From assembly GCF_016433145.1 (NCBI RefSeq), contig NC_058131.1, positions 180,846,964-180,910,963 of the forward strand: 64,000 nt of DNA, read 5' to 3'. Positions 5,681-55,992 of this stretch are shown here, one piece after another; the stretch's first letter is position 1, and every line of letters begins with the position of its first letter. A program made the translations under genes and the position numbers. The stretch comes from Gracilinanus agilis. Taxonomy: Eukaryota. The notes beneath the pieces are model-generated. The model had not been told where the DNA came from. It worked only from the letters and a program-made list of their open reading frames with translations, and did not search any database.

Positions 5681-6124
5681 TACAAACAAGGAGCTTAAAG
5701 TGGGGAGAACTGAATTTTCAGAAAATTCAGATTGTTAGCCTGATTTGATCACTTTCTCCTTCACCGAAGGGAGGGGGGAGGTTGCCTTACAAAGGGAATA
5801 AGTCTTACTCCCCTATCCTCCCTTCCCCCTTTTCAAATTCCAGTCTTTGCCATCTGTCACTCGGAGAATCCCAGAAAGGGGCCGGGAAGCCAAAGCTGGG
5901 AACATGAAGGGGAATGAGAGCTTATCATTCCCGGCAGTGACCTAGATTTAGCTAGGTAATGAATGTCACAATCGGGGCGCACATCGCCCTAGCACCCTTG
6001 ATTTTTGCAAACAATCCCAAGGCTGTTCGGGGCCCTCGGGCTTGTAGTGGGGAGGAGACGAGGCAAAGGGCTGGGTGGGGGATGGGCAGCTGCATTCCTG
6101 TCAAAACCCGCTGCTGGAACCCGC

Positions 6125-6153
6125 GCGGGAAAATCTGCTTGACAATCACGTCA
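6125..6153 (-). promoter_or_regulatory. E2F site TTTTCCCGC (minus strand, 6125-6133) and CRE/ATF-type TGACGTGA (minus strand, 6146-6153)
   Basis: Exact motif matches in the left CpG lobe. Confidence 0.55.
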
Positions 6154-6624
6154 CGCGGCCTCCAGCTAGGAACCGAGCCCATCAGTCCACCCGCCCTCCT
6201 TCCCTCCCCAGGGAGAGCGCTGACAGCCTTCCAGCCGTCGGGATCCAGCATGGCTCACTCTCCCCGAATTCAGTCCCGAGGGGTAGAGAGTCCTCTACTC
6301 CGCGGTTCTCAGTCCAGCAGCCCTGCTGCGCCTGTCTCCTCGTCCCGCCCACCCGGAGAGGCTCGCCCGGCCGTTGGTGAACGGTCCTCTTACGTAAGGG
6401 TCGCGGATCCTCCCTCCCTAATTTCCGTCTCTCCTCCTACCCAGTCTTTCTTCCTTCCCCCTCCCTCTCTATTCCTCTTCCTTCAGTTCCTGTCGCCCCA
6501 ATTCGAGATTACATTTATTTATTAAACGATGCTCGAAGCACTATGCTAGAAATACAACGACCAAAATGAAATAATGCCTGCCCTCCACGAGTTTATATTC
6601 CACTGTTCTTTCTAAGATTTAGGA

Positions 6625-6785
6625 ATTTTTAAACCAGGGATCTGTGAAGTCAACTTTTTCTTCAATATTTCGCTAACCGTTTCAATAGAACTGGTTTCTT
6701 TTGTAATCTTACGCACTTGAAAACATGATTCTGTTAAAGGAAAAGGGCCAATGACGCAAGGTTAAGGTTAAGAAGCCGTTTTTAG
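6625..6785. mobile_element. Old hAT-Charlie (MER5-like) remnant inside the CpG island; a related copy lies at ~33780-33930
   Basis: Diagnostic segments ggtttcttttgtaatc, aaaacatgattctg and aggttaagaa. Confidence 0.5.
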
Positions 6786-6878
6786 TCTTCTGAGAGGTGG
6801 CCCTCTGAAGAGAGAGCAAGGCTTCAGGTTCAACCCTCAGAAGAGACGTTACAGGGGTAATTAGCTGTCAGTGGGTCC

Positions 6879-7038
6879 GCGCTTGCGCGCTCCCGCGCCC
6901 TGCCCTGCTGGCTCCCTCTAGAGGGGAGGAGAGGAAGAGGCAAACTCACTCTTGGTCCTGGTTAAAGGAGGGGGTACGGCCCGGGGCGGGGCGGGGCTGA
7001 GGAGGCGGGTGTCTAGCGTCTCCGCTTTGGGCGGAGTC
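6879..7038. promoter_or_regulatory. TATA-less core promoter motifs: NRF1-like GCGCTTGCGC (6879-6888), tandem GC boxes GGGGCGGGGCGGGGC (6983-6997), GGGCGG (~7030)
   Basis: Direct motif matches in the island upstream of exon 1. Binding is not shown. Confidence 0.65.
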
Positions 7039-7166
7039 GGGACAAAAGCAGCTCCTGTAAGACCCCAGTAGAGCAGCCGGCTGTGTGAGGCGGGAGGTCG
7101 GGTGGCGTAGCTATCCGTTTGTTTTCATCCCTTCGCTTCGCTTCACTGTTCTTTTGCACCTGGGAG

Positions 7167-7170
<4 letters not shown>

Positions 7171-7205
<35 letters not shown>

Positions 7206-7224
7206 TGTGTGTGTGTGTGTGTGT
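7171..7224 (+). repeat. Compound microsatellite (GA)16(GT)11 between the promoter and the CDS2 ATG
   Basis: Read directly from the sequence. Confidence 0.97.
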
Positions 7225-7480
7225 TACCGAGCGGATCCGAGCTCCGTCGGAGGAAGCAGCGCTCCTACTGAGCTGGGGGCGGCAGTGGGGGCTGAGCCTG
7301 GGCCCGGACGGGCCGTGGGGAAGGTCCGGTTTGCTTTGCTTTTCCACTGGGTTTGAGCCCTGTCGGAGAGGGAGAGGGCTTCTAGAAGGCAGAGGCCCTG
7401 AGGCTCCTGCTTCCCTGCAGGAAAAGAGCGTCCTTGGGGAGAAAGAAGGCGGGGGGCCGGAGCAGGAGTGCTTTCCCAGA

Positions 7481-7543
7481 ATGACGGAACTGAGGCAGAG
7501 GCTGCCCCATGAGCCCAACGGGCGGCAGGAGGCGGAGGACAAG
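7481..7543 (+). CDS. CDS2: CDS2 coding exon 1 (MTELRQRLPHEPNGRQEAEDK), 63 nt, phase-0 donor
   Basis: First ATG downstream of the GC boxes (cccagaATGa, A at -3). Translation matches the mammalian CDS2 N-terminus (human MTELRQRVAHEPVAPPEDK). Ends at donor AAG|GTAACT at 7543/7544. Confidence 0.95.
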
Positions 7544-8689
7544 GTAACTGGAGCGAGGGGCGGGCGAGAGCTCTCATGCCCTTTCCGCCCTCTGCGGAAG
7601 GGGTGGGGGGAGCGAAGGGCCGGGGTCGGAGAGGGGGATGGATGCTTCAACCCATCCCCCAGCAGCTACTCTTTGGGGTGCCGGGGATAGAGGCAGAGGC
7701 TGCCTCGGGGCGCATTTGCTTTGGAAGGTGAGGATGTAGACTACTGGAGAGGAAGCCTCGCTGTCCATGTTTTGCTGAACGAAGGGGGCAGCGTGCTGTG
7801 CTGGAGACTGCTGGCCAGGGAGATCAGGGGGCCTGGATTCCAGCTTTGCTCTGTTGTGGGAGAGACCACGGCTAAGCCCTTTCTCCGGGTCCTCAGTTTC
7901 CTTATCTACTAAACAGCGGAGCTGGATTTGGATGAAACCCAAGGGCTTCTCCCGCTCCACATTAAAGGGGGCCTGTTATGCGTTGTGAGCTCCCAGATGC
8001 AGGAGTCATCCAAATGGCAGCTTGCAAGGAAGATATGGATAGACTAGAGATAGTTAGAAAGTGATCTCCTTGTAACAATAACAAGGAAAAGGATTTGTGG
8101 TCGCCTCCCTAAAACATCAGATGTCCGTTCCAAAACATCCTGGCAAATATCCTGGATAATTTAATACTTGCCCGTGATAGAGGAATGATTTACATTTCAT
8201 TTTCTCCACCACCTCTTTTACAAACCGTGAAACCAATCATGTAGAGATAAATTTGGAGTTCTCTGAGCATCCTAATGAAGGCAGGTATGTCAACAAGCCT
8301 TTCAGTGTAGAAACTGTGGACTGATGAAATTGAGAGAGATCTAGTTGTATTTTTTGGATAAGTTGAGACTTATGGCAACTTCAGTGCAAGCTATTCAATC
8401 TGAAGGAAATGAAATGCCCTATATAGTGTCTTCAGCACAAGTTCCTTTTTTGTTGTCACTGTTAAACATTGATCTCTTTTGAGTATAAGACACCAATCTG
8501 GGTGCTTGGGATACAAATTTACTAACTAAAATAAATTCCAGTAAGGGAATTACAAAGAGAAAACATTCCAGTCTCCCTAAAGAGATAAATTGAGAGGTAT
8601 GGCAGCCTAGGTTGTATTTGATAGTAGTGTATGTAAATAAGTGCCATAGGATTTCATTGGTGAGAAATAAGAGTGTGGGTTGCTGTGGT

Positions 8690-17635: not shown

Positions 17636-19404
17636 AGTTCTATTTCTTCTTAATAATTTAATGCCTTTTAATTTATATCAAAGATACAACAAGTAAAGCA
17701 TTTTTATCTAACTTAGGCTATCCTGAAATGGTGGTTATTTTTTATTATTATAGAATTAGAACAGGAAGGACCTTGGAATCTTGTCTAGCTCAACTTTCCC
17801 CTTTTACAGATCATCAAACTGAGGCCCAGAGAGGTCAAAGTTCACATTCCCATTCTAGTGTTCCTCTTTCTAGGAAGTGAAGTATGAGAGAGGTATGGAC
17901 AGCCTTTGACATAGGAATTGGAAGGGACATAAGAAGTCATTGAGCTCAACTTTTTCATTTCTTAGATGAAGAAGTTGAGGCCTAAAAAGGTTAGTAGACT
18001 TGCTCAGAGTAACTTCTAATAAGTAGCTGAGGCTGGATTTGAACCCATATCTTCCTTTTTTGAAGTCCAGTGCCCTAACCATTTTTCCATGCCATTCCTC
18101 ACATATCTCTTAGTTATTTAGGGGCTTTTTTGTTTGCTTCTTGGTTCTTGGCCATGTTTTAAAAATTGCAGGGTACTAATGGTTAGCTAACACAAATGGG
18201 CAAGTAGGTATATTAAAGTTAGGTGATGTTCAAATTAATTGCATTAATCTTTCATATTCATGTACACCTTGTTTTACATAATATACTTGGTCCTGAAAAA
18301 TAGTTGTGTTGATCAAAATTTTCTCAAGTCACATAATTTTAAATGTTCTTCGCTAGAGGAGAATTCTGTGGGTGTTAATTCAGCAATATAAGTTTTGACC
18401 ACTAATGTTTCTATTTAAACTTTCTGTGAGTAGGTTGCCTCATAATAGTGGAAAAAGTAATGGATTTGGGATCCTAGGAGCAAGGAGTGAAAATCTGCTC
18501 TGCCATTAACTACCCATTTACTTCTCATAAAGTTATTGGACTAGATATCTTCTGAAGTTCCATCTAGCTTTGAACCATTCTTTCTTGGGCTTTGATTTCT
18601 TCATCTGTAAAATGAGAGAATTATATATACTAAATGATATCCAAAGTCCCTTCTGGAGATAAAATTTTATCCTATTCTGTGATACGGCTTATCCTAAATT
18701 AGGGCCTGCCCACTTATATGTAGATAGTATTTGTATAACAAAACCATTCTTCTTTTCTATTTGAACAACTAATAGATGAAATCTTATATGTACATTTAGC
18801 ATATGTTTTAAGTCTGTGAGGCAGAAGGTAGCTAAATGAAGAGGGTATCAGTAGATTTATTGTTTACATTTTCTGTATGCAGCTAACCAGGAGATCCTTA
18901 TGATTCATTGGTAATGCCTGGTGCTGTTTATGACTCCCAAGACCCTTTAGAAATGACACAGCAAAATTCAGAATGCTGGCTCCTAGAAACAATTGGAGGG
19001 GAAGGGGGAATTAATTTAATTGTAGCAATGCATAAGCTTTCGGAATGGTGTTCAACTGAAATATTTGCCAATTTTTTCTTGGGTAGTTAATATTTTATAT
19101 TTGTGATTGGGCCAAGCACACCCACTAAGATTATATTTTCAATTTTCTTTTTTTGTGCATTCTTTAGCTGTGACAACAGGAGGAACAGTGCATCTTTTCT
19201 AGTCAGCAGCTTTGGGAAGAAACCACTGGGAGACCTTGGTCCTGTGCTAGGCCTTGCCATGTGACTGGCTTGTTGTTATACATCTACTCAGTGTCAGATC
19301 TTGACTTCTGCCTGAGATAGTCTGGCCTGGGAGTTGTGGCTTTCTTTTGTGCCAAATGGTAACTCAACATAGGGGGATCCATAGGCCTGCAGGATTGAGG
19401 ACTA

Positions 19405-19510
19405 GCACAAAGAAGTATCTACATGCAAAGCCCTGTCTTGATTTATAGTGAGAATATAAATAGGAAAGGAAGAGTCCTTGCTCTCAGGGAGCTTCTTATT
19501 CTAATAAGGA
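19405..19510 (-). mobile_element. L2-type 3' tail directly downstream of the YBX-like fragment
   Basis: Minus strand tagaataagaagctccctgagagcaaggac...cagggctttgcatgtag resembles the L2 3' terminus. Confidence 0.65.
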
Positions 19511-19605
19511 GGCGAGAGATAGGGGACATATATAACAGGTTTCAGCTGAAAGTCAAGTACAAAGGCCTGTTGGCCCTATGAGGTGCAGTAGCAGTACAGA
19601 TGGTG

Positions 19606-19790
19606 ATACATTTTCTTTTGTGTCATTTCCATTAATAAAACCAAATCTATCTAGCACATGTGACTGCAGAGGACTTTGGTGGTGAGAAGTTTTTTTGAAG
19701 GGTTTTCAGTGGCCCTGGCTGATAAGGAAGTAGCAGGCAGCAGCTGTAGCACCTACAGGGGCTGTTGCTAGGTGGCATCTCCATAAAGGT
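19606..19790 (-). pseudogene. Decayed, spliced YBX3-like (Y-box / cold-shock domain) mRNA fragment
   Basis: Minus strand reads ...SLSARATENPSKKLLTTKVL then, after a small deletion, RFGFINGNDTKENV. This compares with YBX3 [46 protein letters not shown] (recalled, not database-checked). Stops and frameshifts are present. Confidence 0.75.
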
Positions 19791-22700
19791 TGTACCCATC
19801 TGTGATGGCAATGGGGGCTGGACCAGTGGTCTAGGGGCTATTGTTATTCCCATAGCTCTGGCATTTGTGTACTTTGCCTGTAGTTGGTAAGTTGGTCATT
19901 GGTTGGTGTTTGTGGGGGTGGAGTATTGAGCCCCTTCTCCACAGGGGTTATTTTCTTCGATAAAAAGGTCAGGCAGGAAGTGAGGCCAGTGGTCTGGGAG
20001 GCTATTAAAGCTAATAGGGACAAGTGTGTGAGCTATGTCCACCCTGACTGTCTTAGGGTGACCATTTCAGGTTTTGATTGTTAGGTGTTGGTTTTATATT
20101 GAGCCAGAATCTTCTTCCCTGCAGCTTCTACCCTTTATTCCTGCTTTTTCCTTTTGGGCCTTGTAGAGTAACTGAATCCTTATGGTAATGATTATCTTGA
20201 GGTATTTGAAGGTTCATCATTTTATCTCCCTCACTAAATTTTCTTTTTTCTAGGTCACATATTTCCAGGTCCTTCAACCTGACCTTATTTTGAATAAGGC
20301 CTCTCTTTCCTTTATCATTGCCATTATCCAATACACATACTCAACTTGTCAGTGTCCCTCCTAACGTCTTAATTTCTACCAAAGAGCATTATATTCCACA
20401 TGACAAGACTAGCCCAAAGAATAGTAGAACGATCACTTTCCTTGTTTTGGTTATAGTTATTTGGACAATGTTTGGTCAATAGTTTTTTTTTTTTGTTTGT
20501 TTGTTTTTTTGCCATGTTGAAGTTATGGAGTCAGTCTTGGCAGTCTTAGGCCTGAGTGGATTTTTGTTTAATTGACATTATTCATTTACTTTTAAATTCA
20601 AATGTCACTTCTCCTAGGCAGTAGGAGCAGGGATAATAATAACCATGTGCAGTGAGTTGAATGCCTCTTTGAACTGCTACACTTCTGAGGCTGATTGGTT
20701 CTGGCTAAAACTTTGGGTTAGGATCAGTATATGGGTACCAGCCCCTCCCGGGCCTGTGAGGCTATCTCTGTGCTATTGGGAGAACTTCTTAGAAATGCTA
20801 GCTGCTCACTACTCTGATATTGATGGATCTGGGAGCTCTGGGGTATAGATATTCTGCTTACCCATGCTAGTTGCACCTTCTTTTCTTCTTTATTCTTCTT
20901 ACTGAGTGATTTCTTATTGAGGCATATTATGATAATGAAATGACTGAATTAAATGGATTTAATAAAAGCATTTCAAAATGTTAGAAACACTATGCAAATA
21001 TAAGATAATATTTTGAAACTGGCCAACTTACAAGAGAAACTTATTTAAATATTGATGTTTTGAAAAAAAAATTGTTGTAATGTCCTCGTGACTGTCTTTC
21101 CCTAGCCCTTACCCCCATCCTCCCTTGTCAAGTCAACAAACATTTATTTTTTTTCAAAGATATCTTATCTTCCCAGTTACATGTAATAACAATTTTCAAC
21201 ATATTTTCTGAAATTATAAGATCCAAATTGTCTCTCTCCTATCCCCCCCCCCCCCCCAGAGATGGTTGGCAGTTTGATCTGGGTTATACATGTATCATCA
21301 TGTAAAACATACATATTGGTCATTGTTGTAAGAGAATACTCATATAAAACCAAAACCCCAAAATAAAACCATGAATCACTAATTCAATAAACATTTATTA
21401 AGTACCAGCTACTATGTGTCCTGTGCTTTTAAGCACCAGGGAAAGAAAAAGCTAAAAATCAGTTCCTGCTCTTAAGAAATTTGTAATGTAAGGAGGGAGA
21501 CAACATGCAAATAACTACTTAAATCAGATGTATACAATATAAATTAGAAATAATCTCAGGGAGAATTCACTAAGATTAAGGAGGATTGGGGCAGAAGCTG
21601 AGATTTGAAGCTGAGGAGACAAGAATGAGGAGGACATCCAGTAATTTCTGGCTAGAGGCAGCTAGGTGGTTCAGTGGATATGGCACTGGGTTTGGAATCA
21701 GGAAGAACTGAGTTCTATTTCTGCTTCAGATACTTTTCTTGCTCTCTGGCCTTGGAAGAGCTTAACACTTAACAGTTATTTGTCTCAGTTTCTTCAACTG
21801 TAAAATGGGGGATAATAATGGCACCTACTTCTAGGGTTGTTGTGAACATTAAATACTGAAAATAACTGGAATTGGGAAATGTGTTTTGAAAGGAACAGCA
21901 AAGAGACTGAATACATGAAAGAGGAGGGAGTAAGTTGTTAGAAGATGGAAAGAAGAGGGGAATGTCAGGCTATGAAAGCCTTGAAAAGCCAAAGAGAGGA
22001 TTTCCCATTTGTTCTTTGTGGTAATAGGGAGCCTTGAAGTTTACTGAGTAGGGAGATGAAGAGCCAGGTCTGCCCTTTAGGAGGAGCACCTTGAGGTGGA
22101 GGGGAGTCCTGGGAGACTCATAGGTTATTGCAGTAATCCAGGACCTGCACCCCGTTGGTATCAGCGATAGCCATAGCACATCTTGGCTGATAAGGTTCCT
22201 CTCATTTTGCGGCTGTCATTTTCTGCCTCTGTTGACAGAAGGGCTGCCACCTGGAGCAAAGAAAAACCAGGCTCTTCTGATTCAAGAACCTGCCTTTCAT
22301 CCTCTTCCTGGGAGCCCACCATCTACTGAGAAGAGTCAGCGAGACCCTCTTCACAAACCAAAGGACTGATAGGACTTGAGAGATTTTAGAGCAAACCAAA
22401 AACTCTTCTCAAAACAAAACCAAAACTCTTCTAAAAAAAACAAACAACCTTAAGACATTTGAGCTTTGAGAGTCTGGCCCCAATGACTTCCCAGAGCACA
22501 GAGAGGAACCACTGAGCAGCTTCCCCTCAGAGGCTTATTTGTCAGGTAGGATGAAGTTGGATCTTCAGGTCTAAACGATTGTGAGTGGATTTGGTGATCA
22601 GTGTAGTAGGGGTGGGATTCCCAGGTCTGTCTTTGAATAGGCAGTAAATACCTACTTAATGGCTTGGTATGCCCTTTTTGGATTGGGAAATGGATACCAT

Positions 22701-29289: not shown

Positions 29290-31163
29290 TGAAATAAAAG
29301 ATATTGAAGTGAACAAAACAAACTTTATTACCCCAAAAAAGTAACTGAGAGCTACTTATCTATATGTCTACTAAGTTTTATGAGAGTCATCTATACCCAA
29401 AGCAAGATCATCCCCTAATACAATTCCTAATTCACAAGTTATGTTATTGCTTTTGAAAGCATTAATCAATAATAGACCATGACTTTATCATCTCACTTTT
29501 GACTGAAAGTGAAGGATAAGTGAAGGGCCAGGGGGCTCCATTGGCACCCTTGTGTTATCAGAAAACCTTGAGGAAGGTCACTAGCATCATCAGTAGATCT
29601 CTGGTGTCAGTCTTTTAGAAGATCTTGGACAAGAGTCTTACAGGATGGGGAGGCATGAATATATTTTGATTTGCATTTGGCATCTCTGGCTTCTTTCAAG
29701 AATCAATTTCACCTCTCCCTTACCCTCCTGCCCCCAGACCTTTTCCTTTGTGATTACCTTTAATTTATTCTATATATGTACATGTTATTTCCCCAGTTAG
29801 AAGATGAGCTCCTTGAGGGCAGGGAGAGTTTTTGCCTTTGTATCTTCAGTGCTTTGTGTTGTATTTGGGCACAGAAAAAATTTAAATGCTTTTTAACTGA
29901 TTGAAAGGAGTAAAATCTTGTTGCCTGATTGGCACTTGCTTGGTTGCCACAGACATTCAATTTGTTAACAACAACAAAACCCAATATTTGTGAAGCACAA
30001 TAAGGGAAACAATTAAATGAAACATGCCTATGTTTATATTGCTTTATTTTATTGTTGTCATTATAGTAAAATGGAACCCAAGAATCCATTCTTCCATTTC
30101 GTTTTCTACTCCCCCCCCCACTTTTTTTAAAACTCTTACCTTCCATTTTAGAATTTGTGTTGTGCTTTGCTTCTACAGTAGAAGAGTAATTATTAGCCCA
30201 GGGTTACATAGCTAGGAAGAAGCTGAGGCTAGCTTTGAACCTAGGACCTCCCATCTCTAGGCCTGGCTTTCAATCCACTGAACCACATAGCCACCTCTCC
30301 CTCCTCATTTCTTCTTTAAAAAGTTTTTTTTATTGATTGTCAACATGCATTGTTAAATACCTACTATGTGCCAGGGAGCATGCTAACCACTGGAGTTTCA
30401 GAAGCCAAAACAGGAGCTCATAATCTAATGATAGAGGCAGTATCCATGTACAAACAAGATAAATTGGACATAATCTCAGAGGGAATACACTGAGATTAAG
30501 GAGATCTGGGAAAGGCTTCTTGCTGAATATGGGCCAGTAACTGAGGCTTGAAGGAGGAAACCAGGAGACAGATGAGGAAGGAGAGAGCTCAGGCCTGAGG
30601 ATAGCCAGTGAAAAATGCCTGAAATCTGGAACTGGAGCATCTTGCATGGAAGATCAATGTCACAGAAAGAGGAATAAACTATAAGAAATACTTGACAGAG
30701 GATCTAGGTTATGAAAGGCATTAAAAGCCAAGTAGAATATTTTAAGTTTGATCCTAGAAGTAACAGGGAACCCCTGGAGTTGATTGAATATGGGTATAAC
30801 ATGATTAGGACATGCTTTAGGAAGAACAGTTTGGCAGCTGAGTGGAGGATGAACAGGAGTCAAGAGAATTGAGGCAGGGAGGCACACCAGCAGGCTGTTG
30901 CACTACAGTAGTGTGTGAGATCATGAGGACCTGCATCAGGGTGGTGGCAGGATCAGAGACTTCTATACAAGAGACATGAAGATTAAGGACAGGACTGCCA
31001 ACAGATTGGTTGTGGGGGTCAGGCGGGAGGATAAGTGAGGCAACACCTAGGTTGGGATCCTGGGTGACTGAGATAGTGGTTCCCTGGGCAGTAATAGAGA
31101 AGTTAGGAAGGTAGAATGTGGTTGAAAATGAATTCAGTTTTGAACATATTGGGTTTAAGCTGT

Positions 31164-55858: not shown

Positions 55859-55992
55859 GAGCCTGAGGGGGAAACAAAGACAGATGGAGAAACTGCATCA
55901 GACAATGAGAGCCGAACGGAACCTGCACCAGTACCCACTTCTGATGATACTCCTGAGGTCTTCAATCGGGCATTGTCAAAGCTGTCCTCAAG
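55859..55992 (+). CDS. CDS2: CDS2 coding exon 2 (EPEGETKTDGETASDNESRTEPAPVPTSDDTPEVFNRALSKLSS+AG), 134 nt
   Basis: Acceptor ttttttag|GAG and donor AAG|GTAATT. Homologous to human ESESEAKVDGETASDSESRAESAPLPVSADDTPEVLNRALSNLSSR. In frame with exon 1. Confidence 0.96.

What the first reader, a model, noticed from the sequence alone, without database searches (positions are those of the whole stretch)
19405..20090. Chimeric retroposon: spliced YBX3-like cold-shock-domain fragment fused to an L2 3' tail, antisense in CDS2 intron 1
Seen: the minus strand of 19606-19696 reads AAAAAACTTCTCACCACCAAAGTCCTC...GATAGATTTGGTTTTATTAATGGAAATGACACAAAAGAAAATGTAT. It translates as KKLLTTKVL...FGFINGNDTKENV, preceded by an Ala/Thr-rich stretch (GDA..ATAPVGATAAA..SLSARA, with frameshifts). 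Established: Y-box proteins have an Ala/Pro-rich N-terminus followed by KK(V/I)(L/I)[29 protein letters not shown], with introns inside this stretch as I recall the structure, so the contiguous match implies an mRNA origin. The codons look closest to YBX3. The similarity stops abruptly at the start of the cold-shock domain, and ~100 bp further 3' (19405-19510) lies an L2 3' terminus in the same orientation. Inference: this is not a simple poly-A pseudogene but a host-mRNA fragment captured upstream of the L2 recognition tail, which could have amplified as an L2-dependent SINE-like family. I have an unverified recollection of similar sequence recurring in marsupial genomes. A mobile element carrying part of an RNA-chaperone gene would be unusual.
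Basis: partly seen in the sequence, partly recalled or inferred. Interest (0 to 1): 0.75.

Follow-up and report, generated by a model that had tools for sequence, protein, structure and literature searches.

The report
Dead Y-box mRNA fragment joined to L2 tail

Summary
Minus strand 19593-19699 is homologous to the Y-box protein coding sequence. Against a fish YBX1 CDS it scores 52.5, versus 17±3 for the null (0/1000). It is the best YBX hit in the whole window.

It runs uninterrupted across exon junctions that a YB-1 paper documents, so it comes from spliced mRNA. It carries a stop, a frameshift and a ~10-nt net deletion, so it is dead.

An L2-type 3' end follows on the same strand. Its similarity to a second L2-like copy in the window starts at 19574.

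The YBX match ends within a few bases of my recalled exon-3 donor. There is no poly(A) there and no significant target-site duplication.

It looks like a CR1/L3 LINE 3' end, from recollection only.

A weak cold-shock-domain-like match downstream of the L2 tail is probably spurious.

This scan has flagged the same YBX-L2 junction before on other DNA of this genome (s1-153783, s1-153872, s1-176204). I did not check those notes.

Verdict: a real chimeric retroposed relic, with moderate interest.

The parts
19700..19870 (-). Decayed Ala/Pro/Thr-rich stretch read as the 3' part of Y-box exon 1 (A/P domain). The 5' limit is uncertain, somewhere in 19830-19875.
   Evidence: Frame pieces. GC is 0.49-0.54, against about 0.37 for the window. 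tblastn gives a linked HSP at 19669-19728 to the fish YBX1 N-terminus. The likeness to YBX3 is from memory only.
19593..19699 (-). Y-box coding sequence from KK(V/L)(I/L)ATKVL through NDTKEDV(..H), corresponding to the end of exon 1, exon 2 and exon 3 joined without introns. It is disabled by a stop, a frameshift and a ~10-nt net deletion.
   Evidence: score 52.5 vs 17±3, 0/1000. Transitions and transversions among mismatches are 11:10 and 13:8, as expected for true homology. Exon assignment comes from the primers in PMC4130533.
19575..19592 (-). Short linker between the last YBX-like base and the first base with demonstrable L2-like similarity. It could be the start of an intron, or more L2.
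   Evidence: The limits come from the alignments. Its origin was not determined.
19385..19574 (-). L2-type LINE 3' end. The firm part is 19451-19574, which includes the core motif at 19474-19494. The 3' limit is uncertain, between 19355 and 19400.
   Evidence: The motif has 3 of 21 mismatches with 0 expected by chance. Similarity to a second L2-like copy at about 29730-29850 (+) scores 45 against 22.9±3.2 (0/1000; alignment A1). The identification as L2 rests on a recalled consensus motif.

Best explanation
Shown:
- This is a dead retroposed relic.
- Its 5' part (about 240-280 nt) was copied from a spliced Y-box mRNA, YBX3-type by my recollection. It covers the end of exon 1, exon 2 and exon 3.
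- Its 3' part (about 190-220 nt) is the 3' end of an L2 LINE on the same strand, starting ~20-25 nt after the YBX sequence.

Inferred:
- Both parts entered the genome together as one RNA.
- That RNA was a YBX3 transcript with introns 1 and 2 already removed. It ran, or was spliced, from the exon-3 donor into an L2 fragment lying in sense orientation in the next intron.
- The L2 reverse transcriptase recognised the L2 tail, as 'stringent' LINEs do. It primed at the tail and copied back into the host exons, stopping early within exon 1 (5' truncation).
- The highly expressed host gene could serve as a promoter-bearing source again and again. That would explain the similar copies that earlier notes report elsewhere in this genome.

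The copy has no promoter of its own and no open frame, and shows no sign of present function.
For: - Y-box homology.
- No introns where YB-1 has them: together with the sequence.
- Strong YBX similarity ends at about 19593-19598. That is within a few bases of the end of the short exon 3. PMC4130533 puts DTKEDVFVH in exon 3. PMC13441540 says deleting exon 3 shifts the frame, which fits my recollection of a 34-nt exon ending CAC CAG.
- L2-type tail on the same strand, from 19574.
- No poly(A) at the break and no tRNA-like head.
- The downstream CSD-like match has a random-like transition fraction (0.19-0.26, against 0.52-0.62 in the true part), so the YBX sequence really ends before the L2 tail.
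- Earlier notes of this scan describe the same junction at other loci. These are leads only.
Against: - No other copy was seen here, so co-mobilisation and family status are unproven.
- No significant target-site duplication brackets the unit.
- The end of the L2 tail is not sharply defined.
- The exact exon-3 end and the YBX3 assignment are recollections.
- The L2 identity rests on a recalled motif plus one other diverged copy.
- A CR1/L3-like 3' end abuts the 5' side, so the 5' limit could reflect a later insertion or a repair event rather than 5' truncation.
- Several weak tests (p 0.001-0.06) leave some room for YBX sequence continuing beyond the L2 piece.
Confidence: 0.5

Rival explanations
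1. The L2-like piece lies inside a longer YBX retrocopy. Either an L2 inserted later into a processed pseudogene, or an L2-derived cassette exon sat between exons 3 and 4 of the source mRNA. The rest of the cold-shock domain would then follow at 19352-19202, with a poly(A) remnant at about 19128-19155.
For: - A collinear, frameshift-tolerant protein alignment runs from HQTAIKK to YAAD, starting right after the L2 piece. Score 39: p 0.007 against genomic windows and 0.05-0.06 against shuffles. With positional criteria, 1/1500 and 11/1000.
- Glocal DNA alignment to the fish CDS gives p 0.007-0.056.
- The codon-position pattern gives p 0.06-0.11.
- There is a GC 0.46-0.50 block at 19150-19400 and an A-rich tract just below it.
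Against: - Identity is 57% with about 20 gap events, against 70% and 6 in the proven part.
- Local DNA alignment is at null level.
- PDB phmmer and tblastn find nothing there.
- The transition fraction of mismatches is 0.19-0.26, at or below random (0.31) and far below the proven part (0.52-0.62).
- The positional criteria were chosen after seeing the alignment.
Confidence: 0.12
2. This is a one-off chimera. During a single L2 (or L1) retroposition the reverse transcriptase switched template from an L2 RNA to a YBX3 RNA, as in U6-L1 type chimeric retrogenes. No family was ever formed.
For: The two parts share orientation. The 3' part is a LINE 3' end and the 5' part is a cellular RNA. No second copy lies in the window.
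Against: A random switch point would fall at an exon border only rarely. There is no poly(A) and no target-site duplication. Earlier notes report other copies with the same junction (unchecked).
Confidence: 0.15
3. The adjacency is a coincidence. An ordinary YBX processed-pseudogene fragment lost its 3' part by deletion or break repair and simply lies next to an unrelated old L2 fragment.
For: L2 fragments are very common in such genomes, and another lies 10 kb away. A CR1/L3-like fragment abuts the other side, which suggests a repeat-rich patch. No target-site duplications were found.
Against: The gap is only ~20-25 nt, the orientation is shared, the break lies at the recalled exon border, and the same pairing is reported at other loci (unchecked).
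Confidence: 0.15

Closest known systems
Platypus snoRTEs: snoRNA head plus RTE LINE tail (Schmitz et al. 2008, as cited in PMC3747384)
   Same: A cellular RNA without its own pol III promoter is joined to the 3' tail of a stringent-type LINE and retroposed through that tail. The copies are dead on arrival.
   Different: There the head is a snoRNA and the partner LINE is RTE. Here the head is a spliced protein-coding mRNA (exons 1-3) and the tail is L2.
MIR/Ther-1 CORE-SINEs, the classical L2-tailed SINEs (table in PMC3747384)
   Same: The 3' end is shared with L2, so mobilisation would depend on L2.
   Different: MIR has a tRNA-derived pol III head and a CORE domain. No tRNA-like head is present here, and the head is pol II mRNA.
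L1 template-switch chimeric retrogenes (U6-L1 and similar) and L1 5' transduction
   Same: A cellular or upstream sequence sits 5' of a LINE 3' part in the same orientation, made in a single retroposition.
   Different: Those end in poly(A) and have target-site duplications. Here the tail is L2, there is no poly(A) and no detectable duplication, and the junction lies at a recalled exon border.
Ordinary L1-made YBX processed pseudogenes
   Same: Spliced, intronless, decayed copy of a Y-box mRNA.
   Different: The mRNA 3' part and poly(A) are missing. Only the 5' coding part is kept, the opposite of the usual 5' truncation.

Membership tests
Processed pseudogene of a Y-box gene | Significant similarity to the parent coding sequence | tested here: met
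   (52.5 vs 17±3, 0/1000). PDB top hits are all Y-box proteins.
Processed pseudogene of a Y-box gene | Introns of the parent gene absent | tested here: met
   GFINGNDTKENV is contiguous at 19607-19642. PMC4130533 puts NVRNGYGFI in exon 2 and DTKEDVFVH in exon 3 of human YB-1. Transfer to YBX3 is by paralogy, which is an inference.
Processed pseudogene of a Y-box gene | mRNA 3' end with a poly(A) tail | tested here: not met
   YBX similarity ends at about 19593-19598 with no A-run there. The only A-rich tract is at 19128-19155.
Processed pseudogene of a Y-box gene | Flanking target-site duplications | tested here: not met
   The best flank pairs are at shuffle level.
LINE-tail-dependent (stringent-type) non-autonomous retroposon of L2 | 3' end homologous to the L2 3' end | tested here: met
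   Recalled L2 core motif at 19474-19494. Significant similarity to a second L2-like copy over 19451-19574. No curated L2 consensus was available.
LINE-tail-dependent (stringent-type) non-autonomous retroposon of L2 | Element terminates at the LINE 3' terminus | tested here: inconclusive
   The tail end could lie anywhere in 19355-19400.
LINE-tail-dependent (stringent-type) non-autonomous retroposon of L2 | Many dispersed copies sharing the same head-tail junction | not testable with these tools
Word searches were blank. Only unchecked earlier notes exist.
LINE-tail-dependent (stringent-type) non-autonomous retroposon of L2 | Head with an internal pol III promoter (true SINE) | tested here: not met
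   No tRNA-like sequence and no Rfam family. The head is protein-coding mRNA.
L1-type template-switch chimeric retrogene | Poly(A) at the 3' end and duplications around the whole chimera | tested here: not met

The most novel reading that the evidence does not exclude
An L2 fragment lying just inside intron 3 of the marsupial YBX3 gene has used the host gene's promoter and splicing as its engine. Transcripts made of exons 1-3 plus the L2 tail were repeatedly retroposed by L2, giving a dispersed family of exon-carrying, L2-tailed retroposons whose master copy is the host gene itself. This would be 5' transduction of host exons by a stringent-type LINE.
Probability: 0.25. Interest if true: 0.6.

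Novelty: new variant of a known kind. Interest (0 to 1): 0.35.

Why it matters
Stringent LINEs such as L2 are thought to make almost no copies of host mRNAs, because they need their own 3' tail on the template. A host transcript that acquired an L2 tail would show one route by which coding exons can still be spread by such LINEs. If the family is real, it would also give a datable marker of late L2 activity in marsupials. The copy in this window has no function. It matters only as one more dated specimen and for the clue that the junction lies at an exon border.

Tried and rejected
**Searches that gave nothing**
- Pfam on four stop-free pieces.
- PDB search of the KKLLTTKVL piece and of the downstream piece.
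- Protein word search with the 50-aa in-frame piece and with the 82-aa out-of-frame ORF: no candidates.
- Rfam: only two sub-threshold chance hits.
- Self-search of the window with blastn and nhmmer: no second copy.
- Literature searches for a YBX/L2 or marsupial Y-box retroposon. The list of SINE/LINE pairs in PMC3747384 holds no such element. PMC9004415 and PMC6547761 say nothing relevant.

- I sent those places to no search tool afterwards and masked them in my scripts.
- One exception was not of my doing: the 'relatives' look-up of the search of earlier findings padded my range to 17850-21400 by itself, and that span contains them.

**Reference sequence used**
- A metagenome pattern scan gave 116 Y-box mRNA contigs.
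- I used only L023 and L109. They are teleost-like, and their termini differ from human YB-1 as I recall it.
- I left aside four genomic contigs of unknown host (L016, L022, L050, L077). I took no contig for human.
- No YBX3 or marsupial reference had a tool reference, so alignment to YBX3 was left out.

**Ideas considered and put aside**
- YBX continuing after the L2 piece: see the first rival. The decisive point against it is the random-like transition fraction.
- A second L2 tail at 19190-19385: not above the genomic null.
- The 14-nt direct repeat 19612-19625 / 19341-19354 (2/2000 shuffles) as a target-site duplication. Rejected because YBX sequence continues past the first copy.
- The CR1/L3 reading of 19880-20300 could not be tested. 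The only other L3-type 3' end in the window is a MIR3-like SINE that shares just the last bases.

Full report
**What is there**

This is not chance:
- A back-translated GFINxNDTKE pattern matches once in 64 kb with no mismatch. None of 100 shuffles matched.
- PDB phmmer with the 50-aa piece lists seven Y-box entries first. Each is individually weak (E 0.6-0.8).
- To get a reference I scanned JGI metagenome contigs for the Y-box signature. Among 116 mostly crustacean-type mRNAs I found two teleost-like YBX1 mRNAs, L023 and L109.
- With these, tblastn gives its best hit of the whole window at 19607-19660, with a linked HSP at 19669-19728 (E about 0.04).
- A DNA local alignment of the fish CDS (K32 to V64) to 19603-19695 scores 52.5, against 17±3 for both genomic and shuffled nulls (0/1000).
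- Mismatches there are transition-rich (11:10 and 13:8), as expected for real, diverged homology.
- The copy has a net ~10-nt deletion, a stop and a frameshift, so it is dead.
- Pfam sees nothing in the short pieces.

**mRNA origin**

PMC4130533 gives primers stated to lie in YB-1 exon 2 and exon 3. They translate to NVRNGYGFI (exon 2) and DTKEDVFVH (exon 3). The paper also states that exon 1 encodes the A/P domain and that exon 2 onward encodes the cold-shock domain.

In the window GFINGNDTKENV is contiguous, and the Ala/Pro/Thr-rich stretch runs straight into KKLLTTKVL. At least intron 2, and most likely intron 1, is therefore absent. Transfer from human YBX1 to the parent gene here is by paralogy, which is an inference.

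The assignment to YBX3 rather than YBX1 rests on my memory of the YBX3 N-terminus and of KKVLATKVL. No YBX3 reference could be fetched, so that step was left out.

**Where the YBX part ends**

Strong similarity ends at about 19593-19598 (…GTAT..CACCA). I recall YB-1 exon 3 as a 34-nt exon ending CAC CAG. Two papers fit this: the exon-3 primer covers GAC…CACC, and deleting exon 3 shifts the reading frame (PMC13441540). Neither gives the exact end. The break therefore lies within a few bases of a splice donor, on partly recalled evidence.

**The L2 part**

- A recalled L2 3'-end core motif is found at 19474-19494 (minus, 3 of 21 mismatches) and once more at 29806-29826 (+). None is expected by chance.
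- The two loci align significantly over 19451-19574 (45 vs 22.9±3.2, 0/1000).
- L2-like sequence therefore begins only ~20-25 nt after the YBX part, on the same strand.
- Its 3' limit is vague (19355-19400).
- No poly(A) follows. There is no tRNA-like head and no Rfam family.
- No significant target-site duplication brackets any version of the unit.

**Does YBX continue beyond the L2 piece?**

By eye, and with a frameshift-tolerant alignment, 19202-19361 can be read as HQTAIKK…YAAD.

In favour, all borderline:
- Alignment score p 0.007 against genomic windows and 0.05-0.06 against shuffles.
- With positional criteria, 1/1500 and 11/1000.
- Glocal DNA alignment p 0.007-0.056.
- Codon-position pattern p 0.06-0.11.
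- The block 19150-19400 is GC-richer than its surroundings.

Against:
- Local DNA alignment is at null level.
- PDB and tblastn find nothing.
- Identity is 57% with about 20 gap events, against 70% and 6 in the proven part.
- Most tellingly, only 19-26% of mismatches are transitions. That is random-like (null 0.31), against 52-62% in the proven part.

I take the downstream match as probably spurious (about 12% that it is real).

**The 5' side**

From about 19880 to 20300 the minus strand reads like the C-terminal end of a CR1/L3-type LINE ORF2 (…LEKRK…KLQGRRFWLNIK…KWSP), followed by an L3-type 3' end. This is recollection only, and I could not test it.

**Family status**

I could not test it:
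- The window has no second copy.
- The look-up of sequencing runs found a near-complete holder, X13.
- Protein word searches were blank.

Earlier notes of this scan on the same genome report the same Y-box/L2 junction at other loci (s1-153783, s1-153872, s1-176204). Their follow-up agents called it a dispersed, decayed marsupial repeat. I treat these as leads that raise the prior, not as evidence.

The literature I could search holds no such element, and the list of mammalian SINE/LINE pairs in PMC3747384 does not include one. A Repbase/Dfam entry cannot be excluded.

**Explanation**

The best reading (about 0.5) is one retroposed RNA made of YBX3 exons 1-3 plus an L2 tail. The junction at the exon-3 donor argues for a YBX3 transcript that ran or spliced into an intronic L2 fragment, rather than a random template switch. 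The L2 tail without poly(A) argues for L2, a stringent-type LINE (background in PMC3747384), as the copying enzyme. The start inside exon 1 fits 5' truncation.

Rivals:
- A one-off template-switch chimera (0.15).
- Chance adjacency after deletion or repair (0.15).
- An L2 piece inside a longer YBX retrocopy (0.12).

**Context**

Translations resembling the CDS2 start (MTELRQR…) at about 7440-7510 and the next exon at about 55865-55975, both on the + strand, turned up incidentally. I recognised them from memory.

**Housekeeping**

- padded my range by itself to 17850-21400, which includes them.
- I took no contig for human. Four genomic metagenome contigs of unknown host were left unused.

Noticed in passing
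window 19880-20300 (minus strand): Reads like the C-terminal end of a CR1/L3-type LINE ORF2 (…LEKRK…KLQGRRFWLNIK…KWSP) followed by an L3-type 3' end. It abuts the 5' side of the YBX part in the same orientation. Recognised from memory only.
   Followed up: partly
window 29660-29900 (+ strand): A second L2-type 3' end, with the core motif at 29806-29826 (2 mismatches). It served as the only in-window comparison for the tail.
   Followed up: partly
window 17890-18150 (minus strand): MIR3/Ther-2-like SINE with an L3-type 3' end motif at 17919-17941.
   Followed up: partly
window 19150-19400: A GC 0.46-0.50 block downstream of the L2 tail, in an intron of about 0.36 GC. It holds a weak collinear cold-shock-domain-like reading and an 11-mer typical of L2/MIR tails at about 19242-19252. 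Its origin is unresolved.
   Followed up: partly
window 19612-19625 and 19341-19354: A 14-nt direct repeat with 13 of 14 bases identical flanks the L2-like piece (2/2000 shuffles reach it). It does not fit a simple target-site duplication, because YBX sequence continues past the first copy.
   Followed up: partly
window 19128-19155 (minus strand): An A-rich tract that could be a decayed poly(A) tail of some element ending here.
   Followed up: no
window about 7440-7510 and 55865-55975 (+ strand): Translations resembling the CDS2 start (MTELRQR…) and its next exon appeared as incidental tblastn output. A GC-rich island lies at 6001-8000.
   Followed up: no
window, whole: 400 N letters are present somewhere in the window. 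I did not locate or examine them.
   Followed up: no
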